64,000 nucleotides of DNA from Haliotis cracherodii. Lineage: Eukaryota. Positions 10,959-56,786 of this stretch are shown here, piece by piece; the stretch's first letter is position 1; each line of letters opens with the position of its first letter. The translations under genes and the position numbers were made by a program. The notes below the pieces were generated by a model. The model worked only from the letters and a program-made list of their open reading frames with translations. It made no database searches and was not told where the DNA came from. The stretch spans positions 12,400,001 through 12,464,000 of the forward strand of contig NW_027266270.1 in NCBI RefSeq assembly GCF_022045235.1, written 5' to 3'.

Positions 10959-11296
10959 GTAAAATATCTGATCCCAATTAGACAGTCTTGTCTCACAGAC
11001 TTGCTCGCTCTGTGAAGAGAAAATACATGTCATGGTTACATGGTGATTATCCCTTTGAACTAAATATTAATTCAGACAAAGGATGTCATGAATCTCTGTC
11101 ACAAATAGTGATGCACTGTCTGCATATTATGCAAAAGAAGGATTTATTTTTTTCTTGTTTTGCCACATCCTTAACTTTAAAGTTCACGGGGAGCATTATA
11201 TCTAGTGTTTGAGGAACTATCTACACAATTATATATATTCTTATCAATTTTGTTTCAGCAGGAGTAGCTTTAATTCCAGTATCCAACTGATGCAGA

Positions 11297-13558
11297 ATGG
11301 GACGAGGCCAGCTGTATTCTCGGGGCATGAAGAAACAAAGCCTTTCGACAACAGCCTTGCTGAACGCGCTGTTGTTAGGCTTATTTCTGAACCTGTGTCC
11401 TCTGTCAGTTTTCTTTACTGATCCAAATAGCCCGGAATTGTGCTTCATCAACTGGAAGAATTTGTTCTACACTGGACTCTGCTTTCTGAAACTCGTCTTC
11501 GCTCTACTGAAAAACAGGGTGCGAACGTCCCTATTGAGATATGGCGGATGGAGGGTTTTCTGCTGTGGCACGTTCATTGTCTTATCTAGTTACCTATTTG
11601 TTGTCTTAGTTTTGGACAGAGCAGCGCTTTGGACATGGGAAACATTTGAATACAATTACATCAATAGATTAGAGGATAGCGTCGTTACCATAGATGAAAC
11701 CAGATCCCAGTTTATGGTGCGTGATCGTGAGATCCCCGGTCCAGAACCCCTGAAGCTCGAGAGACACATGAGATACGAAGGTGAAGACGTAAGACTGGTA
11801 TGTGAAGACATGCTGGTTTTCAATGGAATTGTGAAATTCCACGAGAAGCAGGTGATCTGGAAGCATAATAGGCAGAAAATCGAATCATCGCCCCAGCATC
11901 ATATCACAACAGTGTTTGAAGAAGTCACTTTGAATACTTCTAAAACATTATCCACTGAGTATGACTTCTATATCTATCATGTGAAGTCAAAGCTTGACAT
12001 TAATCTTATCAATGCTGAAGATTTTGGAAAATATTCCTGTCACGTTGCAAAACTGGCCACATTGCTTGCGTCATATGCTAGCGTCAATATGAAAAAAACA
12101 AACGCGGATGAACAAAGTCAGTCTAGAAGAAAAGAATCGTATGAATGTCCGAATGTCCGCAAAGAGCCAACCAAATGCCCATGTCCTGATGAGGATTTGC
12201 CGTCCATGAACTTTAATCCCTTGCCATACACCTGGACTGCAGAGTTCAGTTTAGCAAAGATCAAACCTACGAGAAGAACTGTTTCTGTTCCAGTAGGTGG
12301 TATTGTTTCAACAAGTGCTTCATATAGTTATTTGGAAGACGCGCCAAATCTAATTGACTTTGATCATGAAATCAACGGAAAGTCCTTCCAAAATACATGC
12401 GAGGGACTTGATCAGTCATGCTCCATATTTGTGTTCCTGTACTGGTTCCTGTGGCATGATGGTGGCCATTACTCAAACATTCCTGCCTTCTATCAACAAC
12501 TTCAGATGGTGGAGGGCGTTGGCGGAACAAGCTGGCAATGCGTTTGTCCTAACACATACGGAGTCCACAAATTCGTCTTCTATCGCCAGTTCTATGATAC
12601 AACTCGGGGAACGAACACAATTATTGAAGTGGATTACCCAGACACTGTCGAACTTGTTCCCGAGGAACCCCATCTCTTAGACTTGTACTACAATGGCTCA
12701 AAGAAAGCTCTTCCGTTGCCAGAGCCGTCTTGTTGGGGGAGTGTGAAAACAAAAGCCTGTGAACTACTTGAAATGTTTCTAAAGAATCTATCCTATAACT
12801 ACTTTTATAAAGAAAAGCAGATATTCCTCGGCGGATTCATGTTTTGTCTAGTATTGCCTTGGATTTTGACCAGAACGATATTGACATGGGTGACCAATCC
12901 AATCATCAACATGATACTAGGGAGGAGACGAGTCAACATCCAACCAATCCAAGGAAGTGGTACACTGGCAGGACTTGCGCCAGCAGACAACACTGTTTTT
13001 AAATACGACCTCTACATTTCCTATGCTGATGAACAGACGGCAATGGCGTCTGAAATTGCCCAGGCGCTCACCTCGTGGGGTTTAAGGGTGTGTTTTCGTG
13101 ATAATGATGTTCTCGGAAATGAAATTGTTAACCAGGCTGTTTCAAGGCTGATTGTGGAGAGCTGGAAATTCCTCGTCATTGTCTCACAAGAATACGTCGA
13201 CAGCCAACTTCAGAATAATTTTGAAATGCACCTTATCATACAGAGGCTCCGTGATGGCTATATTAACAATAGAAATGTTGCCATGTTAGCCCTCAATCCT
13301 GATTTGATTCCAGATGTCTTCAGCAGTTTTGTTATTTTAAGCCACTATGAAAACAGTTCTGATGATTTGGATGACATAATGTTATGGCATGGACAATCTA
13401 TATTTCCTAATGATTCAAACACCTCGGCCAAAATTACAGGATCATGCCACTGCCGAGGGATCTTCGATTGCCTTCCACGATTCTTGACATATTTTATTAG
13501 AACAAGTTATGTTTTCTGTTTCATATTTTGTCTTGTACTTTTAACATGGTCTGTTTGA
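11297..13558 (+). CDS. Ig-TIR membrane receptor-like protein, paralog A (753 aa, single coding exon)
   Basis: Long ORF. Ig motifs EGEDVRLVC / VIWKHN / SKLDI..INAEDFGKYSC. TIR box 1 YDLYISY, box 2 GLRVCFRDNDV, then SWKFLVIVSQEY. Hydrophobic stretches at the N-terminus, before the TIR and at the C-terminus. Splice acceptor TTTTGTTTCAG just upstream. Confidence 0.9.
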   Translation: MGRGQLYSRGMKKQSLSTTALLNALLLGLFLNLCPLSVFFTDPNSPELCFINWKNLFYTGLCFLKLVFALLKNRVRTSLLRYGGWRVFCCGTFIVLSSYLFVVLVLDRAALWTWETFEYNYINRLEDSVVTIDETRSQFMVRDREIPGPEPLKLERHMRYEGEDVRLVCEDMLVFNGIVKFHEKQVIWKHNRQKIESSPQHHITTVFEEVTLNTSKTLSTEYDFYIYHVKSKLDINLINAEDFGKYSCHVAKLATLLASYASVNMKKTNADEQSQSRRKESYECPNVRKEPTKCPCPDEDLPSMNFNPLPYTWTAEFSLAKIKPTRRTVSVPVGGIVSTSASYSYLEDAPNLIDFDHEINGKSFQNTCEGLDQSCSIFVFLYWFLWHDGGHYSNIPAFYQQLQMVEGVGGTSWQCVCPNTYGVHKFVFYRQFYDTTRGTNTIIEVDYPDTVELVPEEPHLLDLYYNGSKKALPLPEPSCWGSVKTKACELLEMFLKNLSYNYFYKEKQIFLGGFMFCLVLPWILTRTILTWVTNPIINMILGRRRVNIQPIQGSGTLAGLAPADNTVFKYDLYISYADEQTAMASEIAQALTSWGLRVCFRDNDVLGNEIVNQAVSRLIVESWKFLVIVSQEYVDSQLQNNFEMHLIIQRLRDGYINNRNVAMLALNPDLIPDVFSSFVILSHYENSSDDLDDIMLWHGQSIFPNDSNTSAKITGSCHCRGIFDCLPRFLTYFIRTSYVFCFIFCLVLLTWSV

Positions 13559-14796
13559 TTGAAGACCTCTGTGCTTGCCTTGTTGGCCTTATATGACCGC
13601 GTTTGCCTTATATGGAGCATTGCTGTTGTATCAATATAATGTATCATTGAAAGATATGAAGAAATGAGTGCACCTGGTGTTAAATAAGTTCAGTATTAGG
13701 AGGTTAGGATCTCTACAGGGACTGAGCATCTATTTTCAACAAGACATTTGGGTGCATGAGGGATGCGATTATTATGATGACCATACTTCTCTGTACATTG
13801 TATGCTCGTCAAAACAATTTAGGGATCACTGATATTTTGTAGCACTGTTCATTCGATTCCTTAAAATTTGGTGAATGGACTCCTGATCGACGGCTAACGT
13901 ACTGATATTGAGGACTACCCTTACTCAAGTGACTACATGACCAGAACAAAGAATTTGAATCATACTGAACTCGTAAACGTTCATTTTGACCAGCACTAAT
14001 TTTCATGGAAATTCTTGTTGTAATCTCCTCCTCACATCTACCGTAAAAATGGAGATCGTTCATTTGCTCACTTATTCTCATGAAGCATGAGCCAAAAGGA
14101 ATTTTGTGCGAAATTTGGGTTGATAAAGGCAGGTCGCTATGAAACTGCATCACTGTGTTCAACATGCCACAACGTCGACACCTCACGATTGAAGAACGAG
14201 CCAGAGCTATTGGGTGGCTAAATGAGAATGTTTCACAGCGGGAAGCTGCTCCAAGGTTAAATGTTAGTACATCCGTCATCTGCATATTACGTCAGCGATT
14301 CCAACAAACACAGACAGTACATGATAGACCAAGGTCAGGACGCCCTCGTGTGACAACATGAAGAGGAGACCGGTACGTCGTTGTTGAAGCATTGAGGAGG
14401 AGAACAGTCACAGCAAACCATCTTCGAAAGCAACTGAGGGCTGCTACAGGAACAAATGTCAGTGACCAAACCATAAGAAACCGTATGAGGGAAAGAAACA
14501 TCTGGCCCCGACGTCAAGCCGTTAGACCGCTTCTTCTTCCGCGTCACAGAGCAGCCAGAGACGCATGGGCACGGCAACACCGACAGTGGACAAGACAACA
14601 GTGGTCAGCAGTTCTTTTTTTCTGACGAATCTCGGTTCTCACTGAAGCATAATGACGGTCGTGTTCTTGTCTACAGACGGCGTGGGGAACGTTTTACTGA
14701 CGTCAACGTCCGTGAGCACAATCGTTTTGGTGGTGGTAGTGTCATGATGTGGGCCGCCTTCTAATTTCATCACAGAACCAATCTTTATGTCATCAA

Positions 14797-15070
14797 CGTC
14801 TAAGGCGCCGCGATTCGCTGTGCAGAGTTGCGTCTCTTGGGCACGCCAGAAACCAATGATTGTGGGTTCGAATCCCGGTTCGCCCCGATTATGTTTGAAT
14901 TCTAGGTTTGTCAGTACAATACCCGTGCTCGTGGGTTTCACCGAAGTGGTAAACGTCCGAGACCTGCATCACTTCGGGCTTTCCTCCCACATTAAGCTGA
15001 CACGCCGTGATATAACTGGAATACTGTTAAAAGCAGCGTTAAACCCAACTCACTCTCTCACTCACTCACT
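14797..15070 (+). mobile_element. SINE (family 2) inside the Tc1 transposase
   Basis: GTCTAAGGCGCCGCG..GGTTCGAATCCC B box..(ACTC)n tail. Confidence 0.85.
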
Positions 15071-15463
15071 CCTGATATGGCACCCATTGAACACGTATGG
15101 GATCTGTTAACGAGACGTGTTAGGGAGAACCACCCTCCACCTCAAGATCTGCGCCAGCTTGCTCAATGGCTGAATTTGGAGTGGCATGCTATCCCACAGA
15201 ACACACTACAGACATTAGTGACATCCATGAGGCGTCGTTGTGTTGCATGTGTGGCTGCTAGGGGCGGACACACTCGTTACTGACTTTTCTCTCATGGCCT
15301 GGATTTCCAACTTTGACCCCAGTGACATTATTGACATCAACACTTGTTCACGTTATGAAATGAAGTGGATTGTTCATGATTCTGTCTTACTGTATGCTCG
15401 GTCATTATTGAATTTACTACACATGTCTTCGTCTTCTGTTCCTTTTTTATTTTAAGTGCTAAC

Positions 15464-15745
15464 AGGGGGCACGGGTGGCCCAGTCGTCTAAGGCGCCGCG
15501 ATTCGCTGTGCAGAGTTGTGTCCCTTGGGTACGCCAGAAACATAATTGTGGGTTCGAATCCCGATTCGCCCCGATTATGTTTCTAGGTTTGTCAGCACCA
15601 TACCCGTGCTCGTGGGTTTCACTGAAGTGGTAAACGTCTGAGACCTGCATCACTTCGAGCTTTCCTCCTACATTAAGCTGACACGCCGTGATATAACTGG
15701 AATACTGTTAAAAGCGGCGTTAAATCCAACTCACTCACTCACTCA
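15464..15745 (+). mobile_element. Full-length SINE (family 2) with TSD
   Basis: GGGGGCACGGGTGGCCCAGTCG head; flanked by TTAAGTGCTAACA / TTAAGTGCAAACA. Confidence 0.88.
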
Positions 15746-16010
15746 ATTAAGTGCAAACATATCAATGTTCCCTAACTTCTTTTGAGTAGTATATATGGAC
15801 CCCGTGAGGATTCTGGGTTGGAATAGGTCTGAAGAGCCGGTTAAAGAGGATCGACCGGTCAATCCCAGCGATTGGATTTATACAAAATCTCGTATCAAGA
15901 CTATGTAATGGGTAGATAGCATGGATGGATCATGTGTATAGGATCACGTGTGTTATATGGTATATTGGAGAGAATTATATCACATTGTAGAAGATTATCT
16001 CACATCTTAA

Positions 16011-16830
16011 GGATCCACGAGTTCGTCTTCTACCGTCAGTTCTACAATACATCCCTTGGATTATACGAAGTTATTGTTGTGGAATATTCTACTTGTGTGG
16101 TGTAATCAATGCAGATACTTGAGTATCTTTTGTAAAGGACTGGTTTGGATTTTGACCAATCTCATTAAAATCAGATCTTAGTTCTCGCTACCGCTAAACA
16201 AAGATCTGAGAACACCCCATTACTGGTCATGTCAGACCGACGTTGCGCGACCGACCGATGGAATGACCGACAAGAAGTCGACATTAGCCAATAAGAAAGC
16301 AGCTTTCTCGTGCTTTACGGCACTAATTTCAAATTGGCGACTACGTTTCGAAACATATTTTGACAAATTCTCGATTAAAAGTTTGAAATCTGAACAAAAG
16401 AACATTCTGGATTTATGGCTTATAGATGGTCTAGATTGTATGCATGGATTCAGTCGTTAAGCTCGTAACTATCGCTGGGAATACCCCGTGTTAAGGTTTT
16501 CGAGGTTGCATGATCAGAAATCATATTCCAACTGTCACTTTTATGATCTGGTAAGCGACGCTCTGATTGGTCGGATGAAAGGTGAACCCAAATGGGATGT
16601 CCTCAGACCAAGAACGATGTTGAGACGGAAGACATATCCAAGCATCAGTATGATACTTGGGAGGAGAAATGTAAATATTCAGTCAATTCAAGGAAGGGGA
16701 ACAATAGAAAGACTTGCACCACCAGACATCAATGTTGATAAATGCGACCTCTATATTCCTATGCTGACGATCAGAGGACAAAAGAGCCCAAGCTCTCAAC
16801 TGGCAAGGTTTGGGAGTGGGGTTCTAAATG
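16011..16830 (+). pseudogene. Degraded fifth copy of the Ig-TIR gene (central, TM and early TIR fragments), split by an insertion
   Basis: 16011-16090 matches GVHKFVFYRQFYNT..VEY. 16137-16158 and 16611-16780 match GLAWILT|RT..NPIINMILGRRRVNIQPIQGRGT..LAP..KYDLYI. Deletions and frameshifts are present. Confidence 0.85.
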
Positions 16831-16984
16831 TAAATTTGTAATCGCAGACCTGTTGAATATTGAATGAAATGACCTAACCTGGCTATGTATATATTTTGTA
16901 CACATACACGCACATTCGCACTTGTAAGCGATTGAGTGAACATGCCTGTTTATTGCTTCGGGCATTGCTGATCACAGCTGACGC

Positions 16985-17805
16985 AACTGATCTATTTATA
17001 TACCTTAGGTTTTACCCTGTCGCTTTTGTATTTGAGCGGCATCGACCAGTGTTTGGTTAAACAGGTAACATGTTGTTAAACAGTCTCGATAAATTAATAA
17101 TACAAAACTTAGCCATGTATATGCCACACACCGTTATATAGGACCAAATCTGTAAATAATAGTTAAAATTATGTGCAACATCTCTGTCACATGTACCAAG
17201 CGCCTGGGGCCTGTTAGGTGCTTGAATTAAGATTGATTAATGTTATGCAGAATGCACGTAATTTGTGACTTCTGTTCCCATGAAAAGTGGTGTGGTGGGA
17301 CGTTGTGTTCAGAAACCTATTTGGCGCCATTTATCAACACATCAACTTCCAACTTTATAACCGATCTTACCCCGTGGTGATTCCGGGTTAGAACAGGCAA
17401 CCGGTAATTTATTTTCATCACAAGGACCGACTGGTGAGTCGGGTGGTCAGGCTCGATGAATTGGTTGATTGTGCGTCATGGTACCCCAACAGCGTCGATC
17501 GTTGTTAATACTATCAACAGCTAAATTACCTTGCTCGGGTTCGATGATTTATAGGCCGACTTTATATAAACGTAAAAGAGTTCTAGCTGAGTATGCACAA
17601 CTTAACAAAACTAGGTATTGATATCGTCTCCAAAACGCAACCAGGTGTTATAGACGCACTCTTACTGAAAACATTATGTATGTGAAGTTGTTTATCAACA
17701 ACAGCTCCGATTGCAAGCTTGTTGTGTCTCGATGGACCCGGAGTAAATACACTGAAAAACAGCTGACTACTGCTTTTAAGATACCAGTGAATAAGGTATG
17801 CTTGT
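16985..17805 (+). promoter_or_regulatory. Putative promoter and 5'-UTR exons of paralog B
   Basis: TATTTATA at about 16994. Donor-like sites CAG|GTAACA (about 17063) and AAG|GTATGC (about 17795) are conserved in the mirror arm (about 42055, about 40015). Acceptor TTTTGTCCCCAG at about 18196. Confidence 0.4.
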
Positions 17806-18218
17806 ACACATAATAATATATTAACGTTTCCTGATGGTATCGATTTTGATAGAAGTGATGTTGAATAGTAAGCCTATCTTAAACGCAGCTTAAGAACGGC
17901 CATTTCTGTTACCTATAGGCAGGGCATTTTTAGACACAGGTAATTTCAATAATTTATATTTAATATACACAATTGATGCACGGGTTGATGCATGTCATTG
18001 TATACCAATTACGTGGACCGATGCTCATGATGTCAAACATGTGACACAATATCAATCACTGGATTGTCTGGTCCAGACTCGATTATTTACAAACCGCAGT
18101 CATATCGTTAGAATATTGATGAACGCGGCGTTAAACAACAAACAAGCAAATCATAAACAGTGGTGATTTTAGTTTATTTATTGATTTTGTCCCCAGCTCA
18201 CCAGTCGGCGTGTACAAC

Positions 18219-20480
18219 ATGGACCAACGACGAAAGCTGTATTCTGGGGCTACAAGGAAACCACCCGTTTCTACACCAGCCTTGCTATGTGTCCTGTCTG
18301 TTGGCTTAGCGCTGAACCTTTGTCCTATCATCGACTTATTTACCGACCCAAACAGCCCTGACTTGTGTTTCATTAATTGGTATAAGCTGCTGTATATTGG
18401 ATACTGTTTCCTGAACCTCATTGTTGCTCTGTTGAGAAGCTCTGCCCGGAGGTCTGTGCTGAGATATGGCGGTTGGAGGGTGTTCCTGTGTGGCATGTTC
18501 ATCGTCGTGTCGAGTTATATCTTTGTTACGGTTGTTTTGGACAGATCAGCTCTATGGACGTGGAACACTTTTGAATCCAATTTCATCAAGAGACTGGAGA
18601 GCAACGTCGTTGGGATATTCGAAACTAGGCCTGACTTCGTTGTTCGTGAGTTCCGCACTCTAGAACCCATGAAACTCGAGCGACAAGCCAGGTATGAAGG
18701 TGAAGATGTAAGACTCGTGTGTGAGAACATCTTGATTTTCAATGGAAGAGTAACATTTCACGAGAAACAGGTCATCTGGAAGCATAATAAAGAAAGAATT
18801 GAATCGTCATCCCGACACCACATCACCACGTCGTTTGACGAAATACCTACAAATGAGACTATAAGAACATTGTCGAGTCTTCTTGATATGGACCTTCATT
18901 TATATCGTGTTGAATCAAAACTTGATATCTATCTAATTGAAGATGGTGATTTTGGAAAATTCTCCTGTCATGTTGCCAAAAAAGCTATAGCTATAGAATC
19001 GCAGCACAGTAAATCAGACACAGCTTCAAAACAGACCCGAACAACCACAAAGGAAAAAGTCCAAAATAAACCAAGAGAGAAACAACAATCACCCGAATGT
19101 CCTAAAACACGTGATGAACAGAACCGATGTCCCTGTCATTTTGAGGATTGGGCCCACATGAACTTAAATGTTTTACCCTATCAGTGGACGGCAGAGTTCA
19201 GTCTGGCGAAGATCAAACCTACGAGAAGAATTGTGTCTGTTCCAATAGGTGGTATTGTTTCAACAAATGCTTCATATAGTTATTTGAATGACGGGCCAAG
19301 CGTAATTGACTTTGATCATGAAATCAACGGAAATTCCTTCGTAAGTACATGCGAGGGACTTGATCAGTCATGCTCCATATTTGTGTACCTGTACTGGTTC
19401 CTGTGGCATGATGGAGGCCATTACTCAAACATTCCTGCCTTCTATCAACAACTTCAGATGGTGGAGGGCGTTGGCGGCACAAGCTGGCAATGTGTTTGTC
19501 CTAACACATACGGAGTCCACAAATTCGTCTTCTATCGCCAGTTCTACAATACGACTCTTGGAACATACCAAGTTATTGATGTGGAATACCCAGACACTGT
19601 CGAACTTGTTCCCGAGGAACCCCATCTCTTAGACTTGCATTACAATGGCTCAAAGAAAGCTCTTCCGTTGCCAGAGCCGTCTTGTTGGGGGAATGTGGAA
19701 ACAAAAGCCTGTGAGTTACTTGAAAGGCTTCTAAGGAGTCTATGTTGTAACTACTTTAACAAAGAAAAGCAGATATTCCTCTGCGGATTAATATTTTGTT
19801 TAGGATTGGCTTGGATCTTGACCGGAACGATATTGAGATGGGTGACCAATCCATGTATCAACATGATACTTGGAAGAAGACGAGTTAACATTCAGCCAAT
19901 CCAAGGAAGAGGTACACTAGCAGGACTTGCTCCAGCAGACAACACTGTCGTTAAATACGACCTCTACATTTCCTATGCTGATGAACAGACGGCAATGGCG
20001 TCTGAAATTGCCCAGGCGCTCACCTCGCGGGGTTTGAAGGTGTGTTTTCGTGATAATGATGTTCTCGGACATGAGATTGTTACCCAGGCTGTTTCAAGGC
20101 TGATTGTGGAGAGCTGGAAATTCCTCGTCATTGTCTCACAAGAATACGTCGACAGCCAACTTCAGAATAATTTTGAAATGCCGCTTATCATACAGAGATT
20201 CCACGAGGGTTATATCAACGACAGAAACGTATCCCTCTTACCATTGCGCCATGATTTGATTTCCAATGTCTTGAACAATTTCATTGTTCTGGACAAGTGT
20301 GAAAACAGTGAGGATCTAATAGAAGATGTACTGTTATGGTATGGGCCGTCGCTATTTCCAAACACTGCCCATATCATCAGACGTCGCCACTACGGTTTTA
20401 CATCGACCTCAGCCTACTATGTCAGTGGTGTTTGCTTTTATTTGTTGCTTTGTATACTTCTTACGGGCTCTGTTTGGTAG
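18219..20480 (+). CDS. Ig-TIR membrane receptor-like protein, paralog B (first ATG at 18219)
   Basis: Same architecture as A: EGEDVRLVC..WKHN..DFGKFSC; YDLYISY..GLKVCFRDNDVLG..SWKFLVIVSQEY; hydrophobic C-terminal tail. AATAAA at about 20983. Confidence 0.9.
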   Translation: MDQRRKLYSGATRKPPVSTPALLCVLSVGLALNLCPIIDLFTDPNSPDLCFINWYKLLYIGYCFLNLIVALLRSSARRSVLRYGGWRVFLCGMFIVVSSYIFVTVVLDRSALWTWNTFESNFIKRLESNVVGIFETRPDFVVREFRTLEPMKLERQARYEGEDVRLVCENILIFNGRVTFHEKQVIWKHNKERIESSSRHHITTSFDEIPTNETIRTLSSLLDMDLHLYRVESKLDIYLIEDGDFGKFSCHVAKKAIAIESQHSKSDTASKQTRTTTKEKVQNKPREKQQSPECPKTRDEQNRCPCHFEDWAHMNLNVLPYQWTAEFSLAKIKPTRRIVSVPIGGIVSTNASYSYLNDGPSVIDFDHEINGNSFVSTCEGLDQSCSIFVYLYWFLWHDGGHYSNIPAFYQQLQMVEGVGGTSWQCVCPNTYGVHKFVFYRQFYNTTLGTYQVIDVEYPDTVELVPEEPHLLDLHYNGSKKALPLPEPSCWGNVETKACELLERLLRSLCCNYFNKEKQIFLCGLIFCLGLAWILTGTILRWVTNPCINMILGRRRVNIQPIQGRGTLAGLAPADNTVVKYDLYISYADEQTAMASEIAQALTSRGLKVCFRDNDVLGHEIVTQAVSRLIVESWKFLVIVSQEYVDSQLQNNFEMPLIIQRFHEGYINDRNVSLLPLRHDLISNVLNNFIVLDKCENSEDLIEDVLLWYGPSLFPNTAHIIRRRHYGFTSTSAYYVSGVCFYLLLCILLTGSVW

Positions 20481-20529
20481 AATATCTTTTCTAATTGTGT
20501 CATCATATATGAATTGCTGCTTAGGTTTT

Positions 20530-20780
20530 GATTTTTGTTTGTTTGTTGTTTAACGCCGCACTCAGCAATATTCCAGCTATTCCAGCGGTCTGTAAATAAA
20601 CTGCACCAGACAATCCAGTGATTGGCATCATAAGCATACATCCACGCAATTGTGATACAATGGCATGCATCAACCAAGTCAGCGAGATCCTGTTAGTCGC
20701 CTCTTACGACAAGCATAGTTGCTTTTTGCGGCAAGCATGGGTTGCTGAAGACCTTTTCTACCCCGGACCTTTACGGGTAG
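20530..20780 (-). mobile_element. SINE (family 3) in the 3' region of B
   Basis: (TTTG)n tail followed by the family-3 body; flanked by the duplicated GCTTAGGTTTTGA. Confidence 0.82.
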
Positions 20781-21287
20781 CTTAGGTTTTGAAATGGAGG
20801 AAGCAAAGGCTTGAGGGAAGGGATGTATGCGATGATGTTAGTTGTGAATTACCTCCCTTGCAATCTACGCACAGATGAAGTGACAACAATATGGTCCATA
20901 ATGTACAGAATTAACATGTTTTACATGTTGTTATAAGACTTGCATATAAATGTATATAAGACTTGTATATAAATGCTTGGTTAATAAACATATCTAGATA
21001 GACAATGACGCTTGTTCTGGTTATTGGAAACATACGATTGGATGCATCGTTATAGATATTACTAACGGTTCGAATATATTTTAATCACTTTGTATATATT
21101 TATAAGCTCGTAAAAATGCGGTAATACTCAAAGAAAAGAATAGTTTACATTGATTTAAGCAAAAGTGAAAAAAGAATTGAAATGAAATACATGTATAAAA
21201 TTTAACTATACTGAAATCTTGCATAATTTCTTACAATATTTTATTCAAAAGAAGATACTAGTAATTGATTATACACAGAAAACAATC

Positions 21288-22548
21288 AGTCAGTGAGTTG
21301 GGTTGTACGTTGTCTTTAGCACTATCCCATCTATGATACAGCAGGGGACTTTCGACACGTTGGCCTCGTATGTGAATTGAACTCGGTATTCAGTGTGAGG
21401 AGTAAACCTTTTCGGTGTGAGGAACGTTTTCGGTGTAAGGAGTGAATGTTTTCGGTGTAAGGAGTGAAGGTTTTCGGTGTGAGGAGTGAAGGTTTTCGGT
21501 GTGAAGAGTTAAGGTTTTCGGTGTAAGGAGTGAACGTTTACAGTGTAAGGAGTGAACGTTTTCGTTGTGAGGAGTGAACGTTTACGGTGTAATGAGTGAA
21601 CGTTTTCGGTGTGAAGAATGAATGTTTTCGGTGTGAGGAGTGAACGTTTACGGCGCAATGAGTGAACGTTTTCGGTGTGAAGAATGAACGTTTTCGTTGT
21701 GAGGAGTGAACATTTACGGTGCAATGAGTGAACGTTTTCGGTGTGAAGAATGAATGTTTTCGGTGTGAGGAGTGAACGTTTTCGGTGTAAGGAGTGAACG
21801 TTTTCGGTGTGAAGAATGAATGTTTTCGGTGTGAGGAGTGACATGAGGAGTGAGGAGTGAACGTTTTCGGTGTAAGGAGTGAACGTTTTCGGTGTAAGGA
21901 GTGAACGTTTTCGGTGTATGGAGTGAACGTTTTCGGTGTGAGGAGTGAACGTTTTCGGTGTAAGGAGTGAACGTTTTCGGTGTGAAGAATGAATGTTTTC
22001 GGTGTGAGGAGTGAACGTTTTCGGTGTAAGGAGTGAACGTTTTCGGTGTGAAAAATGAATGTTTTCGGTGTGAGGAGTGAACGTTTTCGGTGTGAAGAAT
22101 GAATGTTTTCGGTGTGAGGAGTGAACGTTTTCAGTGTAAGGAGTCAACGTTTTCGGTGTATGGAGTCAACGTTTTCGGTGTAAGGCGTGATCGAACGTTT
22201 TCGTGTAAGGAGTGACATGAGGAGTGAGGAGTCAACGTTTTCGGTGTAAGGAGTGAACGTTTTCGGTGTAACGAGTGTATATGTTTTCGGTGTGAGGAGT
22301 GAACGTTTTCAGTGTAAGGAGTGAACGTTTTCGGTGTGAAGAATGAATGTTTTCGGTGTGAGGAGTGAACGTTTTCGGTGTAAGGAGTGAACGTTTTTGG
22401 TGTGAAGAATGAATGTTTTCGGTGTGAGGAGTGAACGTTTTCGGTGTAAGGAGTGAACGTTTTTGGTGTGAAGAATGAATGTTTTCGGTGTGAGGAGTGA
22501 ACATTTTCGGTGTGAGGAGTGAACGTTTTAACCACCACATTATCCCAC
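21288..22548 (-). mobile_element. Old family-1-like SINE whose head region expanded into a minisatellite
   Basis: SINE tail and body at 21288-21390; SINE 5' end TTTTAACCACC..ATCCCA at about 22527-22548. The mirror copy at 34788-34955 lacks the expansion. Confidence 0.7.
21392..22530. repeat. 22-bp minisatellite (about 50 units)
   Basis: Unit GGTGT(A/G)AGGAGTGAACGTTTTC, with variant GAAGAATGAATG. Confidence 0.95.
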
Positions 22549-34787: not shown

Positions 34788-34955
34788 GGCGACTGGGTAG
34801 CTTTGTGGTTAAGCTTTAGCTCATCACACCAAAAGACCGGGTTCGATTCCCACAAGAGTATAACGTGTCCAAAGTCCATTTCTTGTGTCCCCTGCTGTGT
34901 TTTTGATGGAATAATGCTAAGGACAACGTCAAACCGAACTCACTGACTGACTGTT
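34788..34955 (+). mobile_element. Old family-1-like SINE (mirror counterpart of 21288-22548)
   Basis: GGGTAGCTTTGTGG..GGTTCGATTCCC..AACTCACTGACTGACTG. Confidence 0.75.
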
Positions 34956-35112
34956 TAATGGGAGAGTCCGGCCTAGCGCTGCAGAGGGGAAGGATTATCT
35001 TAGGAGGTTCAACCCTGTAGTGGTTTTAACATCATGGCGTGGGGAGATATTTCCAGACAAATCAAGACCGAGATGGTGATTTTCAAAGGGACTTTATAAG
35101 AGCACAAGGGTA

Positions 35113-35225
35113 CAGGGCCCACTTGCACAAAGCGATCTTAGCGCTAAGACCGTCGTAAGCCTATGTTAAAGTATGGGAGTGACGGTCATCTTAGCGATAA
35201 GATCGCTTTGTGCAAGTGGGCCCTG
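35113..35225. mobile_element. Palindromic MITE inserted in a Tc1-like fragment
   Basis: CAGGGCCCACTTGCACAAAGCGATCTTA...TAAGATCGCTTTGTGCAAGTGGGCCCTG. Confidence 0.75.
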
Positions 35226-35506
35226 GAATCAGGTTGTAAACCAGTCGTTCTTTATTGTTTGCAACAACAGACACAAATTATGTAATATTCTTATGTAAGC
35301 TAACCGGAATAGTTTGATTGAAACGATTTTTAAAAATGTTATACTTGTCTTTCATTTCAACTCTCTCTTCTATGAATGTTATATATATTCGTACCGATAA
35401 TAATTTGCATAAGGATGCATCCGATTGTAAGTTTCTATTAAGAACAGGATTAACCAGAACAAACTTCATTATCAGTCTATCTTGATACGTTTATTAACCA
35501 AGCATA

Positions 35507-35830
35507 CAGACAGACAGACAGACAAATTATTCGGTACTTCAGGCCACCGGCCCATTATACAATGGAAATATACTGTATATATATGTTTGCATACTGGGTA
35601 GATTTAATAATGATTTATCGTTCCACACTGTTTCCTTTCGATGTTCATGACCTGGGAGAGAAACTTACCTAAGCCTTTTATAATTTCTTCGTTTTCGGCT
35701 GACATAAGTCTTATAAAATTCTCAATAGAGGGAGGGGTAACGAGACGCTTGGGAAAAGAGTTTCTTCTTGCTCTAGAATATTGGTCACAAATCATAAGAA
35801 CATGGAATTCGTCTTCTACAAGCATACATA
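35507..35830 (-). mobile_element. 5'-truncated LINE 3' end (CR1/L2-like ORF2 C-terminus)
   Basis: VEDEFHVLMICDQY...NFIRLMS..IIKGLGKFL followed by a (TCTG)n tail; absent from the mirror arm. Confidence 0.7.
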
Positions 35831-35923
35831 CTGTCTTATAAAGGCAAATAATACATATTAATATATTGTGCCATATGAGCCACATTGTGGAAACACGTGT
35901 CATTGTAATCACTTCACGTGTGC

Positions 35924-36192
35924 GTGAAGATCCGGGTAGAGAATAGGTCTTCAGCAAACCCATGTTTGCCATAAGAGTCGACTATCCTTGCCGTAAGAGG
36001 AGACTAACGGAATCGGGTGGTCAGGCTCGCTGACTTGGTTTATGCATGTCATCGTATCCTATAATTGCTTGGATCGATGTTCATGACTTCAACCACTGGA
36101 TTGTCTGTACCGGACACGATTATTTACAGACCGCCGTCATATAGCTAGAATTTTGCTGAGTGCGGCGTTAAGCAACAAACAAACAAACAAAG
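35924..36192 (+). mobile_element. SINE (family 3)
   Basis: CGTGAAGATCCGGGTAGAG head and (AAAC)n tail. Confidence 0.82.
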
Positions 36193-36406
36193 GTACATTG
36201 CAAAGGAGCTAATTCATAACATTCAAAATCACATACTTCTAGGTTACGGAAACATGCGAGTGCTGACGAATGCATCCATATCTCCAGAAGACTTTGTTTC
36301 CCCCACTTCTAAACCTAAGCAGTAATTCATATATGACAAGTCCCAAATACTTTTCAGAAAACTATTGCATTGCTGCTGTGGAATGACACCATCAGAAGAA
36401 AGTATT

Positions 36407-38659
36407 CTACCAAACAGACCCTGTAATAAGTATACGAAACAACAAGTAAAAGCAAACACTGCTGACGCAGTAGACCGAGGTTGATGTAAAACCGCAATCA
36501 TGGCCTCTTATATTAATATGGACAGCGGTATATGGTTCGTTTTGAAATAGTGACGGTCCGTGCCATAACATTATATCCTCTACACGATCCTCACTGTTTT
36601 CATACTGGTTGAGAATAACGAAATTGTCAAAGACATCGGAAATCAAGTTTGGTTGCAATGGTAAGAGGGCTACATTTCTGTTGCTGATATAACCGTCGTG
36701 GAATCTCTGTATGATAAGGCGTATTTCAAAATCATTCTGAAATCGGCTGTCAACATACTCTTGTGAGACAATGACGAGAAATTTCCAGCTCTCCTCAATC
36801 AGCCTTGAAACAGCCTCGGTAACAATGTCATGTCCGAGAACATCATTATCACGAAAACACACTCTCAAACCCCGCGAGGTGAGAGCTTGGGCGATTTCAG
36901 TCGCCATTGCCATCTGTTCATCTGCATACGAAATGTAGAGGTCGTATTTAACAACAGTGTTGTCTGCTGGCGCAAGTCCTGCTAGCGTACCTCTTCCTTG
37001 GATTGGTTGGATGTTGACTCGTCTCCTCCCAAGTATCATGTTGATGATTGGATTGGTCACCCATGTCAATATCGTTCTGGTCAAAATCCAAGCCAGTCCT
37101 ATACAAAATGATAGTCCAAAGAGGAATATCTGCTTTTCTTTGTAAAAGAAGTGACTTGATAGATCCTCCAGCCACATTTCAAGAAACTCTTGTTTATCAA
37201 CATCCTCCCAACAAGACGACTTTGGCAACGGAAGAAGTTTCTTTGAGCCTTTGTTATACAAGTCCAAGAGATGGGGCTTCTCGGGAACAAGTTCTACAGT
37301 GTCGGGATATTCCACATCAATAACTTGGTATGTTCCAAGGGTCGTATTGTAGAACTGGCGATAGAAGACGAATTTGTGGACTCCGTATGTGTTAGGACAA
37401 ACACATTGCCAGCTTGTGCCGCCAACGCCCTCCACCATCCGAAGTTGTTGGTAGAAGGCAGGAATGTTTGAGTAATGGCCACCATCATGCCACAGGAACC
37501 AGTACAGGAACACAAATAAGGAGCATGACTGATCAAGGCCCTCGCATGTTTTAATGAAGGACCTTCCGTTGATTTCATGATCAAATTCAATGAGTCTGGG
37601 CGTGTCATCCAGATTCATATAAGACGCACTCGTAGAAACTATACCACCTATTGGAACAGACACCGTTCTTCTCGTAGGTTTGATCTTTGCTAAATTGAAC
37701 TCTGCAGTCCACTCATACGGTAAAACACTGAAGTTCTTGTGAGCCCAATCCTGAGAAAGACAGGGACATCGGTTATGTCCCTCGCGTGTATTGGGACATT
37801 CTCTGACTTTATTTTTGACTTTTTCTTTTGTTGCCGTTCGGGTCTGTTTTGAGTCTTTTCCTGATTTACTGTCCTGCGATTTTATAGCAATAGCGTCTTT
37901 GGCAACATGACAGGAAAATTTTCCAAAATCATCGTTATTAATTAGAAAAATTTCGAGTTTTGATTCAACACGATATAAATGAAGGTCCATGTCAAGTCGA
38001 CTCGACACTGTTCTGATAGTGTCATTTTCCGGTATTTCGTCAAACGACGTGGTGATGTGGTGTCGGGATGACGATTCAATTCTTTGTTTATTATGCTTCC
38101 AGATGACCTGTTTCTCGTGAAATGTTACTCTTCCATTGAAAATCAAGATGTCCTCACACACGAGTCTTACATCTTCACCCTCATACCTGGCTTGTCGCTC
38201 GAGTTTCATGGGTTCTAGGGTGCGGAGCTCACGAACAACAAAGTCAGGCCTAGTTTCGAATATACCCACGACGTTGCTCTCCAGTCTCTTGATGAAGTTG
38301 GATTCAAAAGTGTTCCACGTCTATACAGCTGATCTGTCCAAAACAACCGTAACAAAGATATAACTCGACACGACGATGAACATGCCACACAGGAACACCC
38401 TCCAACCGCCATATCTCAGCACAGACTTCCGGGCAGAACTTCTCAACAGAGCAACAATGGGGTTCAGGAAACAGTATCCAAAATACAGCAGCTTATACCA
38501 ATTAATGAAACACAAGTCAGGGCTGTTTGGGTTGGTAAACAAGTCGATGATAGGACAAAGGTTCAGCGCTAAGCCAGCAGAAAGCACACATAAAAAGGCT
38601 GATGTTGAAATGGGTGGTTTCCTCATACCCCGAGAAGACAGCTGGCACCGTTCGTCCAT
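36407..38659 (-). pseudogene. Ig-TIR paralog B': full-length frame with one in-frame TAG at 38323-38321 (TGG/Trp in B)
   Basis: ORFs 38321..38668 and 36407..38269 are in the same frame. B' reads GCT GTA TAG ACG TGG where B reads GCT CTA TGG ACG TGG; otherwise the frame is intact through to GSVW*. Confidence 0.8.
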
Positions 38660-38759
38660 GTTATACACACTGGCTGTTCAGCTGAGGATAGAATAATAAA
38701 CACCTTATAATCACCACTATTCAAAGAGTAATTGCCCCCTTATCAAAACAAATCTAAAA

Positions 38760-39790
38760 TGTATTCTACTATGACTTCGGTAAATACTCGTATTTGATTG
38801 GTCAATCAGAGGTATCAAATCACAATAACCCCCACACCCACCCCTGTTTGAAACAGCCGATTTGACGGCCGCATCAGCGTGGAAGCTAATATTTTTAGAC
38901 TAGTACTTCTTTTACAGTCATTGTCGGTGGGCATTTTAAACAAATTATATGTACAATTATACGCTATAAAAATTGCAAAGTTTCGGTTACTATGATATTC
39001 AAAGGATGTGTGTCAATAATTGCATGCAGAAAACAGGATAGGAATCTGCGTCACAATGAGCGACATGACGCCATAATAGTGACGTGTGGTGTAGAACGAA
39101 ATCTTTGCAGGTCGTGCTTGGTTTTCTTCAGGGGTGCCCACCTCATGTTAGCTTTCGATGTTGCCGTGCTACATGCTTTCACTGCCTGTCATAAGTTCGT
39201 GTGAAGTATTACGGTGTAAACAAACTGCTTGAGCATATAGAGCGCCAGCTATTGTTTAAAGGCTGTTGTCGGTGATGCCGTAAATTCTGATAGACAACCC
39301 ACTTAAAACACCGAACTCAACCCATGCCGCTTCACTTATGTATGTTCTGACCCGTGAAGATTCCGGGGTAGAATAGGTCTTCAAAAACCCAAACTTGCCG
39401 TAAAAGGCGACTAACGGGATCGGGTGGTGCATGTCATCGATCCCAATTGCGTGGATCGATGCTCATGATATTAATCACTGGATTGTCTGGTCCAGACTCG
39501 ATTATTTACAGACCGCCGTCATACAGCTGGAATATTGCTGAGTGCGGCGTTAAACAACAAACTAACCAATCAACCAATATAATTTTCTAACACCAAAGAG
39601 TTCGCCTTTTATTTAGTCATGGTAGAATGGAGATAAACATACTGTGTTTTCAATGTAGAGCCAGGTTACCTGCAGAATAAACCCCGCTAAATTTAACATT
39701 TTCGCGTTCCGTTCCAAATTCAGTTTAGCGAGGTTAATCTACAGATAGCCTAGCTCTTCATTGAAAACACATTATACTTATCTCCTTAAT
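38760..39790. mobile_element. Element with an IR-bounded body and an approximately 155-bp terminal hairpin; contains a family-3 SINE (39350-39577)
   Basis: IR ATTCTACTATGACT / AGTCATGGTAGAAT; palindrome AGATAA..TGTGTTTTCAATG...CATTGAAAACACA..TTATCT at 39631-39785. Confidence 0.6.
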
Positions 39791-40633
39791 ATACATGGCT
39801 CAATATGGTGTGAAAATGTTAACTTAAAGTTCAATTTTGAAGCCGTTAAGTGAAAATACATGTGTCTAAAAATACACTGCCTAAGGTAACCGATAAAGAG
39901 TCTTTGTCAAGCTGTGTTGAAAATGGGAGATATATTTCATTCCGAGTCTGCCGATTCTATATCACGGCTGTCAAAATAGACGCCGCCAGGAAACATTATT
40001 ACTTGTACAAGCATACCTTATTCACTCGTATAGGAAAGCAGGATTCAGCAGTTTTTCAATATATATATACTCCGGGTACTTTGAAAGGCAACACGCATCT
40101 GGGCTGTTGTTGATAAACAACTTCGTATACGTAATGTATTCAGTGACAGTGGTTGTGCAATACCAGGTTGCGTTTTGGAGACGATATCAATACCTAGTTT
40201 TCCTTTGTTATGTATACTCGACAGAGAACGCTTAGTGCGATAACCATACATTGATTTTATATCTTTGTTGCCGTTATTGAGTTTGAAACAGCTTGCACTC
40301 AACAATATCCAGCTGAATGACGTAGTCTTGGAAATAATCGAGTCTGGACCAGCCATTCCAGCGACTGATATCTCGGTTCTGACGACCAGCACTGGGTAAG
40401 GCTGAAAAAAGTTGGAGAATGGCTGTGATGCATGTTGATCAATGCCGCGGAATATGTTTGTGAACACAAAGTTCCAGCACCCCTCTTCTGCAATTATCTT
40501 CTTTTCATGGGAATAGAAGAACTTCCGAGACTTCTCCTATTTATAAGCCCCAGGCCTAATTACGGAAAATAGCGCTTTCTCATTTAAAATATGTTATCCG
40601 GAATTAAGCCCAGGGCTCAATTTCGGAAGCTAA

Positions 40634-41767
40634 CGCCCCCTTCACATACACGGATTTTTCTTACGAGTCCTTACGGATCGCACACATTCACGGATTCTTA
40701 CGATTTGGCCACTTTTACGACCGATTTAAGAGTTGTTACGAGTTATTACGAGCTATTTACGGTTTATTACGGATTATTACGATGTATTTACGGCAAAATT
40801 ATACGATTTGCTACGAGCAACTTACGGGCATTTTACGAGGTTGTTACGGATTGTTACGAGTATATTACGGATTGTTACTATTCATCGAAGCATATACGTG
40901 TTAGTTAGGACCTGTTTACGTGTTGTTACGAATAGTTACGAGTTAGTTACGAATATTTACAAGTCCTTACGATTTTTTGCCAAAAAATATATATATCCTG
41001 CAAATCTCAATGTATCATCATTCGACAAGTGACACCAAGAGAGACAACATGGCATATGAGAGAAACCGATTGCAGTTATATATTTCGAAGCGCAGGAGAC
41101 TTCTTGTTGACTGCCTTCTTCTTTGGAGCCATGCTTGTAGATATTGTGGAGTAGATATGCAGAGATGTGACTTCTATGACTTCTGAATAACATCTGAAAA
41201 TGAAGTGTTCGCTTTTGCAGCTTTTATACCTTCCCCCAAATCGTAAACATTACTTTAGAAGACGTAAAGTATACGTATCTATTCGTAAAGTACTCGTTAC
41301 TGCACGGAAAGTGCTCGTAATAACTCGTAACAATCCGTAAAGCCATCGTAACACGACCCGAATGAAATCGTAAACAGCACGTAAGCACTCGTAATAAAAC
41401 GTAAATTATCCGTAAACAAATCGTAAACTAACCGTAACAAATCGTAAAAACATTGTTACGATCCATTTACGGATTCTTGCGAGCAGTTTACGGATGGTTA
41501 CGTGTTGTTGCGAGCGGTTTACGATACTTACAGATTGTTACGAGTTATTTACGAAAATATCAAGCCGTGGACAATCGTAAGATGACTTTTGACATGTAAA
41601 AAAAATTGCCTCTCCTTTTACGGATCCTTAAGAGTGTCTGCGAGATGTTGCGAGTTGTGACGAGTTATTTACCGATACCAGCGAGTTATTTACGGATGCT
41701 TGCGATTGACTACGAGTTGGCGATCCGTAAGGACTCGTAAGAAAAATCCGTGTATGTGAAGGGGACA
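40634..41767. mobile_element. PIF/Harbinger-like MITE
   Basis: About 45-bp TIRs CCCCTTCACATACACGGATTTTTCTTACGAGTCCTTACGGATCG, TAA on both flanks, and dense internal TTACG(A/G) motifs. Confidence 0.85.
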
Positions 41768-42353
41768 TAAATAGGGGGGAAACCCTTTGCTGAAAAGCAA
41801 TTAGAAACTGTTAAGTTGTTTTTAACAGAGAAAGTATAACACGTGAATTTGAACTTTGAACCGGACTTACTGTTGAATGCACATAAGGATTTGCCTCGCG
41901 TGGTGCATCGCCACGTATTAACTTTCAAAAGGAGTAAGTTATAAATTTAAGGAAGATCACTCTAATATAAGTATCCGAATTAAGTCCATGGGCCTTTCTA
42001 AGTCCATGAGCGCAATTACGTAGTGTACGTGCATTCTGCAACACCGAACATATTACCTGTTAAACCCAACTCCGGTTGATGTAGCCAAAATACGTTACTG
42101 TACATAAACGAAGCCGGGTAAAGCCCAAGATGTATAAATAGATAGTTGCGTCAACCGAGAAAGCGAGGTCCTCAGGATCAGCGACGCCCCGAATCAATAG
42201 GCATCTGCACTCGTTTGTGCCTGTACGTTTGCGTGCCCAACACAAAATTTAAATATGCGTAGCTAGGTTTCGCAGGCCTGCAGGTAGAATTTGATGTGCG
42301 TGTTGCATGTTATAATGGCCTGTTGGAACCGACCATTGGCGAGCGACTTGCAA

Positions 42354-42965: not shown

Positions 42966-43311
42966 TTTCACTGTGTACCACGGATACTTCCGAGGTACTA
43001 GTAGGTTTTCATTCTGTTAAAATGTATAAAAATGTGTTTATATGTTGCTAAGGAACAGGGGGCCTAGCCAATTAGCTTGAAGCAAATTATAAAGTCGACT
43101 ACACCAATATCCTTTCCACTATGGGCCATCCTACTCACGGATATAGATGAAACTATGCCATAAACCGTGATATACCGTGGAACAAACATATGTCCTACTC
43201 TTATAAAGGATCGATTTAGCGACTAGGATCCTGAATACAATCGCTGGCCGCGCACCTTATCAGTGAAAGGAGTGTTAGGGGCATCGCTTGAGAAAGAGTT
43301 CCTGCTCTTTC

Positions 43312-56747: not shown

Positions 56748-56786
56748 CATCATCGGTGATGATATTTGTCATCATTCATTGTCACA

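What the first reader, a model, noticed from the sequence alone, without database searches (positions are those of the whole stretch)
12280..13230. Mosaic ancestry: gene ends follow A/A' versus B/B', the middle follows the tandem neighbour (gene conversion)
Seen: the N-terminus/Ig domain and the TIR C-terminus group A with A' (NVAMLA.NPDLIPDVF) and B with B' (NV.LLPL..LIS.V). In contrast, A and B share VPEEPHLLDL.YNGSKKALPLPEPSCWG and DEQTAMASEIAQ, including synonymous sites. A' and B' share KKLLPLP and DEQMAMATEIAQ, with an identical stretch TGGGCGATTTCAGTCGCCATTGCCATCTGTTCATCTGCATACGAAATG at about 36888 and 46541. Inference: after the inversion, repeated conversion between same-strand neighbours homogenised a defined tract while the putative ligand-binding part stayed divergent.
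Basis: seen in the sequence. Interest (0 to 1): 0.8.

Follow-up and report, generated by a model that had tools for sequence, protein, structure and literature searches.

The report
Gene conversion among four abalone TIR-receptor paralogs
Four neighbouring copies of an abalone immune-type (Ig/TIR) receptor gene have repeatedly copied a ~950-base middle section into one another while their two ends stayed distinct. This is a clear but ordinary case of gene conversion, very like the one known for mammalian TLR1 and TLR6.

Summary
The window is from a Haliotis genome. It carries four intronless Ig/TIR transmembrane genes laid out as A> B> ... <B' <A', inside a collinear inverted segmental duplication.

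- **Gene ends:** 228 informative sites support AA'|BB' against 7-9 for AB|A'B' (ML support 100/100). Synonymous divergence between A-type and B-type is about 1.2-1.3.
- **Middle tract:** The signal flips to AB|A'B' (23-25 sites against 6; ML 99/99) and A-B dS falls to 0.15.
- **Internal control:** A-A' and B-B' dS do not fall in the middle, so neither constraint nor a low mutation rate explains the pattern.
- **Artefact check:** no two copies share more than 100 identical bases in a row. Contigs from two other studies reproduce gene A across both junctions. A second species label shows a contig that branches from A-type to B-type at the 3' boundary.

- The tract is a patchwork of several events.
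- A' keeps an unconverted block and A keeps another.
- There is also exchange between the inverted arms: A-B', and a 550-nt B-B' tract in the "divergent" N-terminal part.

The closest precedent is TLR1/TLR6 (Kruithof 2007), which has nearly the same tract architecture. I rate this a new member of a known kind, of moderate interest. Two earlier scan notes lie on this same stretch; no look-up was made for other DNA.

The parts
11297..13558 (+). Gene A: intronless 753-aa ORF. N-terminal hydrophobic helices, weak Ig-like region, Cys/Trp-rich ectodomain module, TM, TIR, C-terminal hydrophobic tail.
   Evidence: ORF. Pfam TIR/TIR_2 above threshold, Ig_3 below. Hydropathy.
18219..20480 (+). Gene B: 753-aa tandem neighbour of A, 4.7 kb downstream on the same strand.
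36407..38659 (-). Gene B': inverted copy of B. It has one in-frame TAG at 38321-38323 (codon 113, where B has TGG).
46066..48342 (-). Gene A': 758-aa inverted copy of A.
12255..13237 (+). Converted tract in A. The 5' switch lies between 12231 and 12279, the 3' switch between 13228 and 13246. It encodes the membrane-proximal ectodomain module, the TM and about the first 60% of the TIR (A aa ~320-647).
   Evidence: Breakpoints. dS. Trees. Codon identity at conserved residues 91.9% against 56.7% and 53.8% at the ends.
19207..20189 (+). Same tract in B (switches at 19183-19231 and 20180-20198).
36713..37689 (-). Same tract in B' (switches at 37713-37665 and 36722-36704).
46366..47348 (-). Same tract in A' (switches at 47372-47324 and 46375-46357). 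The block 46746-46938 is unconverted: it is 31% different from the other three copies.
12637..12887 (+). A-B fragment (B 19589-19839), the best-scoring A/B stretch. Here A carries B-type sequence: B' is nearer to A and B than A' is.
   Evidence: Mismatch-tolerant Sawyer-type test, p<=0.001. Distances for M3.
12861..12955 (+). A-B' fragment (B' 36995-37089): 27 polymorphic sites with 1 mismatch. This is exchange between non-orthologous copies on opposite, inverted arms.
   Evidence: p<=0.001. (2/102 differences). (the relic fragment agrees with B and A' at the two AB'|A'B sites).
46516..46636 (-). A'-B' fragment (B' 36863-36983) at the start of the TIR.
   Evidence: p~0.003. M5 tree, AB|A'B' 98/98.
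18302..18846 (+). B-B' low-divergence tract (B' 38032-38576) in the N-terminal part. Divergence is 3.2% against 15.8% downstream, and pS is 0.075 against 0.29. I read it as a recent arm-to-arm conversion. The TAG of B' lies inside it.
   Evidence: (Fisher p=1e-4; A-A' shows no such drop).
16014..16818 (+). Decayed partial fifth copy between A and B, in pieces at 16014-16087, 16121-16158 and 16606-16818. It holds middle-tract sequence only, at about 68-86% identity, with indels.
11087..21410 (.). Left arm of the inverted segmental duplication.
   Evidence: Thirteen collinear inverted blocks, with intergenic pieces at about 72-93% identity.
34811..48529 (.). Right arm of the inverted segmental duplication. 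The spacer between the arms is about 13.4 kb.

Best explanation
Inferred history:
1. An old tandem duplication produced an A-type and a B-type Ig/TIR receptor gene. Synonymous divergence at the gene ends is about 1.3.
2. The pair, with its flanks, was later duplicated in inverted orientation. The arm-to-arm baseline dS is about 0.2-0.4.
3. Before and after that, non-reciprocal recombination (interlocus gene conversion) repeatedly copied patches of a ~950-nt internal tract from one paralog to another. The exchange was mostly between same-strand neighbours 5-7 kb apart and sometimes between the inverted arms.

Result: the tract encoding the membrane-proximal ectodomain module, the TM helix and the first ~60% of the TIR evolves in concert. 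The N-terminal part (TM helices plus Ig-like region) and the C-terminal TIR and tail keep their type identity.

In two adjacent sub-tracts B-type sequence overwrote A-type: in the right arm at alignment nt 1366-1440, and in the left arm at 1441-1633.

The sharp, shared boundaries are most simply explained by a feedback. Conversion needs near-identical sequence, so it cannot extend into flanks that are about 35% diverged. Selection for type-specific ends and a common signalling core may add to this.

Shown here: the mosaic, the synonymous-site contrast, the breakpoints, and that the pattern is not an assembly artefact for gene A. Inferred: the order and direction of events, and the reason for the boundaries.
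For: - **Site patterns and breakpoints:** (Fisher p = 1.2e-20; 2dLL 119.5 against at most 26.1 in permutations).
- **Synonymous divergence:** A-B 1.26 / 0.15 / 1.19 and A'-B' 1.31 / 0.27 / 1.64 across the N / middle / C parts. The controls A-A' (0.29 / 0.39 / 0.23) and B-B' (0.19 / 0.25 / 0.50) do not fall in the middle.
- **Codon identity at conserved residues, A-B:** 56.7% / 91.9% / 53.8%.
- **DNA ML trees:** N and C parts (A,A')|(B,B') 100/100; middle (A,B)|(A',B') 99/99; TIR 5' half 98/98.
- **Sawyer-type fragment tests with permutation:** A-B, A-B' and B-B' at p<=0.001; A'-B' at p~0.003.
- **Sub-tract distances:** M2, A is the outlier; M3, A' is the outlier at 31%; M4, A-B' differ at 2/102.
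- **Inverted segmental duplication:** collinear flanks.
- **No other possible donor:** the genome holds no other close copy, only a 29%-identical paralog on another contig.
- **Independent reads:** contigs from two other studies of the same organism match gene A across both junctions with 0-2 differences per piece. Contigs that leave A at 12594 continue as exact B' sequence. Under another species label, a contig identical to A over 13200-13242 continues as B-type sequence.
- **No long identical runs:** the longest exact run shared by any pair is 100 nt or less.
Against: - No GC3 rise in the tract, so there is no signature of GC-biased conversion.
- Strict no-mismatch runs for A-B are short and not significant globally. 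The events are old or overlapping, so single tracts and their directions cannot be reconstructed cleanly.
- In the block where A' looks unconverted, the H. rubra and H. asinina orthologs agree with A/B/B' at 7 of 12 protein columns and with A' at 1. The origin of that A' block is therefore not settled.
- Only gene A was checked against independent reads.
- No genomic DNA of other species' clusters could be fetched. No B-type ortholog is annotated elsewhere. Timing relative to speciation is open.
Confidence: 0.9

Rival explanations
1. There was no exchange. The middle tract is simply under much stronger purifying selection, or mutates more slowly, so A-type and B-type have diverged less there.
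For: - The tract holds the most conserved protein module: codons 391-455 have pN 0.006-0.026.
- The module is also conserved in H. rubra and H. asinina.
Against: - Synonymous divergence between types drops about 8-fold in the tract, while A-A' and B-B' synonymous divergence does not drop.
- The topology changes to AB|A'B' with 99/99 support, rather than merely shortening.
- Codon identity at conserved residues jumps from 57% to 92%.
Confidence: 0.02
2. This is an assembly or polishing artefact. Reads from one paralog were used to correct another, producing false shared tracts.
For: - The four copies are similar enough in the middle for reads to be mis-mapped.
- Logan contigs break up in this region.
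Against: - No two copies share more than 100 identical bases. The tracts differ by 2-11% and form a graded mosaic.
- Independent short-read contigs from two other studies reproduce gene A across both switch points with 0-2 differences.
- The same 3' boundary shows up as an A/B branch point in contigs of another species label.
Confidence: 0.03
3. A single ancient replacement, before the inverted duplication, made the middle of A0 and B0 identical. Everything since is independent divergence, so there was no repeated or post-inversion conversion.
For: - Sub-tract M1 (alignment nt 1056-1365) is star-like, with all six pairs 5.5-10.6% apart. That fits homogenisation before the duplication.
- The tract boundaries are the same in both arms.
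Against: - A star tree predicts equal numbers of the three informative patterns. The observed counts in the tract are 25 / 6 / 5.
- A' keeps a block 31% diverged and A keeps another at 16-24%. A0 and B0 were therefore not identical there at the time of the duplication, and each arm was converted later in a different place.
- A-B' differ at 2/102, and the B-B' tract has pS 0.075. Both are younger than the arm baseline.
Confidence: 0.05

Closest known systems
Gene conversion between mammalian TLR1 and TLR6 (Kruithof et al. 2007, PMC2077338)
   Same: - Tandem paralogs of a TIR-bearing transmembrane receptor.
[quoted passage not shown] It is homogenised by repeated independent conversion, with nearly fixed boundaries.
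- The N-terminal sensing part and the last part of the TIR are excluded.
- Codon identity at conserved residues is 56% / 96% / 65% there and 57% / 92% / 54% here.
   Different: - A different, unrelated ectodomain: no LRRs, but a weak Ig-like region plus a Cys/Trp-rich module, and extra N- and C-terminal hydrophobic segments.
- A mollusc rather than a mammal.
- Four copies in an inverted-duplicate layout, with inter-arm as well as neighbour exchange.
- A patchier tract that retains unconverted blocks.
- Independence across species is not yet shown here.
Vertebrate TLR1-family evolution, including bird TLR1A/B and TLR2A/B (PMC3125219; title and start of abstract only)
   Same: The paper's title names gene duplication, gene conversion, positive selection and co-evolution in a TIR receptor family.
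   Different: I did not read that paper beyond its title and the start of its abstract. It concerns LRR receptors of vertebrates.
Arm-to-arm gene conversion in large inverted repeats or palindromes, for example on the human Y chromosome (from my own knowledge, not checked here)
   Same: Inverted duplicate arms exchange sequence without crossing over. Here that applies to B-B' (about 550 nt) and A-B' (about 95 nt).
   Different: The arms here are old and mostly diverged (dS 0.2-0.4), not kept near-identical. Exchange is confined to pieces of the coding sequence.

Membership tests
Interlocus (ectopic) gene conversion between paralogs | Different segments of the same genes support different, well-supported tree topologies. 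| tested here: met
   Gene ends (A,A')|(B,B') 100/100; middle (A,B)|(A',B') 99/99. Site patterns.
Interlocus (ectopic) gene conversion between paralogs | Homogenisation extends to synonymous sites and is not explained by local constraint or mutation rate. | tested here: met
   A-B dS is 1.26 / 0.15 / 1.19, with A-A' and B-B' as internal controls. Codon identity.
Interlocus (ectopic) gene conversion between paralogs | Pairwise fragments longer than expected under permutation of polymorphic sites (Sawyer/GENECONV logic). | tested here: met
   I wrote my own implementation. A-B, A-B' and B-B' reach p<=0.001 and A'-B' p~0.003. The strict no-mismatch version is weaker. The GENECONV and RDP programs themselves were not available.
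Interlocus (ectopic) gene conversion between paralogs | Internal patch with two switch points and flanks unchanged, as opposed to a single crossover chimera. | tested here: met
   Two breakpoints, both gene ends keep their type, and the flanks are collinear.
Interlocus (ectopic) gene conversion between paralogs | Present in the organism's DNA, not only in this assembly. | tested here: met
   Shown for gene A only: contigs from two other studies and from other species labels.
TIR-domain receptor | TIR domain above the curated threshold, on the cytoplasmic side of a TM helix. | tested here: met
   PF01582 and PF13676 are above their gathering scores in A, B and A'. A hydrophobic segment lies about 40 aa upstream. 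Topology is inferred only.
IL-1 receptor family (Ig ectodomain + TM + TIR) | Recognisable Ig domains in the ectodomain. | tested here: inconclusive
   Ig_3 and I-set hits are below threshold (17-18 bits against a cutoff of 30; E = 0.004-0.09). B has none. Language-model neighbours are IL-1R/IL-18R-type clusters at 0.90-0.91, which is a lead only. The AlphaFold model was unusable. The extra N-terminal TM helices and the C-terminal hydrophobic tail are not features of IL-1R.
Toll-like receptor | Leucine-rich-repeat ectodomain. | tested here: not met
   No LRR family among the Pfam hits at E<=0.1.

The most novel reading that the evidence does not exclude
The tract boundaries may be held by selection rather than being a passive by-product of divergence. 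On this reading, conversion works as a module-level mechanism. It keeps a shared core (membrane-proximal module, TM, and TIR boxes 1-2) co-evolving with common partners across all four receptors. The N-terminal sensor part and the C-terminal TIR and tail stay type-specific. That would be a convergent re-invention, in a mollusc Ig/TIR family, of the architecture seen in vertebrate TLR1/TLR6, run here across a four-copy inverted cluster. The same boundaries in sister species (contig break points at about 12310 and 13242) hint at recurrence.
Probability: 0.3. Interest if true: 0.5.

Novelty: new member of a known kind. Interest (0 to 1): 0.35.

Why it matters
- **A clean natural experiment.** Two gene types sit on two arms, so each pair serves as the other's control for mutation rate. 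The case for conversion is therefore unusually tight from a single genome.
- **A parallel with TLR1/TLR6.** The tract has nearly the same length, covers the same parts of the protein and excludes the end of the TIR. This suggests a general rule for duplicated TIR receptors: the signalling and dimerisation core is kept uniform while the sensing ends diverge.
- **A practical warning.** Trees, dating and selection scans for this family, and probably for other mollusc immune-gene clusters, will mislead unless they are done segment by segment.
- **A caution for the neighbouring scan note.** The "almost invariant" module noted there is nearly invariant at synonymous sites too. That may reflect conversion rather than constraint alone.

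Tried and rejected
I could not fetch the H. rubra and H. asinina loci, so the cross-species work is at protein level only.
- **AlphaFold2** on the 6-sequence alignment gave pLDDT 30.5. The model is unusable, I ran no fold search, and the ectodomain module remains unassigned.
- **A search for B-type orthologs** using B's N-terminal 340 aa found only the same two A-like proteins from other species.
- **Rooting the protein trees** with the 29%-identical paralog left the order of (A,A'), (B,B') and the orthologs unresolved.
- **GC-biased conversion** shows no GC3 excess in the tract.
- **The strict no-mismatch Sawyer run test** gave only short A-B runs with poor global p-values. I replaced it with a mismatch-tolerant score.
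- **The relic fragment at 16014-16818** is not closer to any one copy (67-71% over the aligned piece). It is not a plausible recent donor.
- **The large profile search** (search of protein representatives) was not used. The claim does not rest on the family's identity.

Full report
**What is there**

The window has no N and about 40% G+C. It carries four long intronless ORFs:
- A, 11297-13558 (+)
- B, 18219-20480 (+)
- B', 36407-38659 (-), with a single in-frame TAG at 38321-38323 where B has TGG
- A', 46066-48342 (-)

The layout is A> B> ... <B' <A'. A self-comparison shows thirteen collinear inverted blocks linking 11087-21410 to 48529-34811. These include decayed intergenic pieces at about 72-93% identity. 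The two pairs are therefore arms of an inverted segmental duplication around a ~13.4-kb spacer.

The whole 1.18-Gb assembly holds no further close copy. There is only a decayed fragment between A and B, and a 29%-identical paralog on another contig.

The proteins have a TIR domain above Pfam threshold, and A and A' have a sub-threshold Ig-like match. Hydrophobic segments lie at the N-terminus, before the TIR, and at the C-terminus. The nearest database proteins are uncharacterised proteins of Haliotis rubra and H. asinina at 73% and 71% identity, so the genome is an abalone's.

**Checking the observation**

The 48-mer is exact at 36888 and 46541.

Parsimony-informative sites in the codon alignment:

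| Alignment nt | AA'\|BB' | AB\|A'B' | AB'\|A'B |
|---|---|---|---|
| 1-1060 | 177 | 3 | 2 |
| 1061-1965 | 6 | 23 | 4 |
| 1966-end | 51 | 6 | 1 |

Fisher's test gives p = 1.2e-20. The best two-breakpoint model puts the switches at A 12231-12279 and A 13228-13246. Its 2dLL is 119.5, against a maximum of 26.1 in 100 permutations.

**Is it conversion?**

The four-copy design supplies its own control. Nei-Gojobori dS by segment:

| Pair | N part | Middle | C part |
|---|---|---|---|
| A-B | 1.26 | 0.15 | 1.19 |
| A'-B' | 1.31 | 0.27 | 1.64 |
| A-A' | 0.29 | 0.39 | 0.23 |
| B-B' | 0.19 | 0.25 | 0.50 |

The tract is therefore not cold for synonymous change. What collapses there is only the distance between gene types.

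Identical codons at conserved residues between A and B run 56.7% / 91.9% / 53.8%. ML trees on DNA give (A,A')|(B,B') 100/100 for both ends and (A,B)|(A',B') 99/99 for the middle.

My own Sawyer-type test, with mismatch penalty and permutation, finds these significant fragments:
- A-B: A 12637-12887
- A-B': A 12861-12955
- A'-B': A' 46516-46636
- B-B': B 18302-18846

**Not an artefact**

- No pair shares more than 100 identical bases in a row, and the tracts differ by 2-11%. This is not what polishing errors look like.
- Twenty public runs hold part of gene A.
- Contigs from two other studies of the same organism label match gene A with 0-2 differences per piece, and they bridge both switch points.
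- A contig that follows A to 12594 continues as sequence identical to B' 37320-37349.
- Under another species label, a contig identical to A over 13200-13242 runs on into B-type sequence, 2 mismatches from B 20195-20224. That species therefore has the same 3' boundary.
- Runs of transcriptome size hold the gene in related species. Their RNA status is a guess by the tool, so expression is not shown.
- Only gene A could be laid, because one call was allowed.

**Anatomy of the mosaic**

| Sub-tract (alignment nt) | Pattern |
|---|---|
| M1, 1056-1365 | Star-like; all six pairs 5.5-10.6% apart. Codons 391-455 have pS 0.05-0.10 in every pair. |
| M2, 1366-1440 | A is the outlier at 16-24%; B, B' and A' are close to one another. 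|
| M3, 1441-1633 | A' is the outlier at 31%, the same as the type-to-type distance at the gene ends. A-B are 11% apart. |
| M4, 1634-1735 | A and B' differ at 2 of 102 nt. |
| M5, 1736-2004 | Clean AB\|A'B', support 98/98. |

In M2, A shares several residues with the abalone orthologs. This fits A keeping A-type sequence there and A' having been overwritten from B'.

In M3, B' is nearer to A and B than A' is. A was therefore overwritten by B-type sequence in the left arm.

Protein columns shared within one arm are derived in the left arm at some sites and in the right arm at another. Both arms have therefore had exchange since the duplication.

Outside the tract, B and B' are 3.2% apart over alignment nt 91-635 and 15.8% apart after it. 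Their pS is 0.075 against 0.29 (Fisher p = 1e-4), while A-A' shows no such step. I read this as a recent arm-to-arm conversion. The B' stop codon lies inside it.

**Most likely history and mechanism**

1. An old tandem duplication gave the A-type and B-type genes.
2. The pair was later duplicated in inverted orientation.
3. Patchy non-reciprocal exchange occurred before and after that. It was mainly between neighbours and sometimes between arms.

I infer that the common boundaries reflect the need for near-identity to start and extend heteroduplex. Once the ends are about 35% diverged, exchange stays confined to the middle. Selection for a uniform signalling core may add to this. The boundary explanation is inference, not shown.

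**What remains unexplained**

- In M3 the orthologs agree with A/B/B' at 7 of 12 columns and with A' at only 1. Either the orthologs were themselves converted, or the A' block has another origin.
- No B-type ortholog is annotated in other species, and the rooted protein trees are unresolved. The age of the A/B split relative to speciation is therefore open.
- There is no GC3 rise in the tract.

**Comparison with what is known**

The closest precedent is mammalian TLR1/TLR6 (PMC2077338).
- It was converted independently in nine species with almost fixed boundaries.
- Codon identity there is 56% / 96% / 65%.

The present case has the same logic and almost the same numbers. It occurs in an unrelated ectodomain family, in a mollusc, and in a four-copy inverted layout that adds inter-arm exchange. 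It is not a TLR, since no LRR is found. Membership of the IL-1R family is inconclusive.

**Verdict**

The process is well known and this is a new instance in a little-studied gene family, of moderate interest.

- The AlphaFold model was unusable.

Noticed in passing
window 38321-38323 (- strand): B' has a single in-frame TAG at codon 113, where B has TGG. It lies inside the B-B' tract that is only 3.2% diverged. Downstream dN/dS for B-B' (0.36-0.39) shows no relaxation. The stop therefore looks recent, allelic, or an error.
   Followed up: partly
window 16014-16087, 16121-16158, 16606-16818 (+): A decayed partial fifth copy sits between A and B. It holds only middle-tract sequence (ectodomain module piece, juxtamembrane region, start of the TIR) and has indels. 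No counterpart was seen in the right arm.
   Followed up: partly
window 13548: Contigs of two independent runs of the same organism both lack one base here relative to the window. The site is 10 nt before A's stop codon, so the last residues of A may differ between individuals or be an assembly slip.
   Followed up: no
window 6056-9139: A 3.1-kb tandem array of a 41-nt unit (about 75 copies, 82% matches), interrupted at 7936-8185 by a ~250-nt element. Copies of that element are also at 14797-15064, 15485-15745, 50856-51079 and 59277-59534.
   Followed up: no
window 21389-22529: A 1.1-kb tandem array of a 22-nt unit (about 52 copies) lies just inside the spacer, next to the left arm. Strong positive GC skew (0.25) over 20-22 kb.
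   Followed up: no
window 9965-10209, 17983-18153, 20534-20778, 35923-36187, 39394-39572, 43663-43859, 56784-57034, 63641-63903, 2699-2910: A ~250-nt dispersed repeat family (SINE-like, 70-85% identity between copies) flanks the receptor genes on both arms. One copy sits right after the stop of B and another right after the stop of B'.
   Followed up: no
window 55824-56747 (+): A 307-aa ORF with four C2H2 zinc fingers (Pfam E = 1.6e-25).
   Followed up: partly
L005 (G000 contig 10, 24260319-24262307, -): A distant paralog (26-29% identity) with the same overall layout. It has one in-frame TAG late in the TIR region.
   Followed up: partly
window 24701-25218 and 42489-42968: A 518-nt direct repeat at 90% identity. 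One copy lies in the spacer and the other in the A'-B' intergenic region. It is not part of the inverted collinear chain.
   Followed up: no
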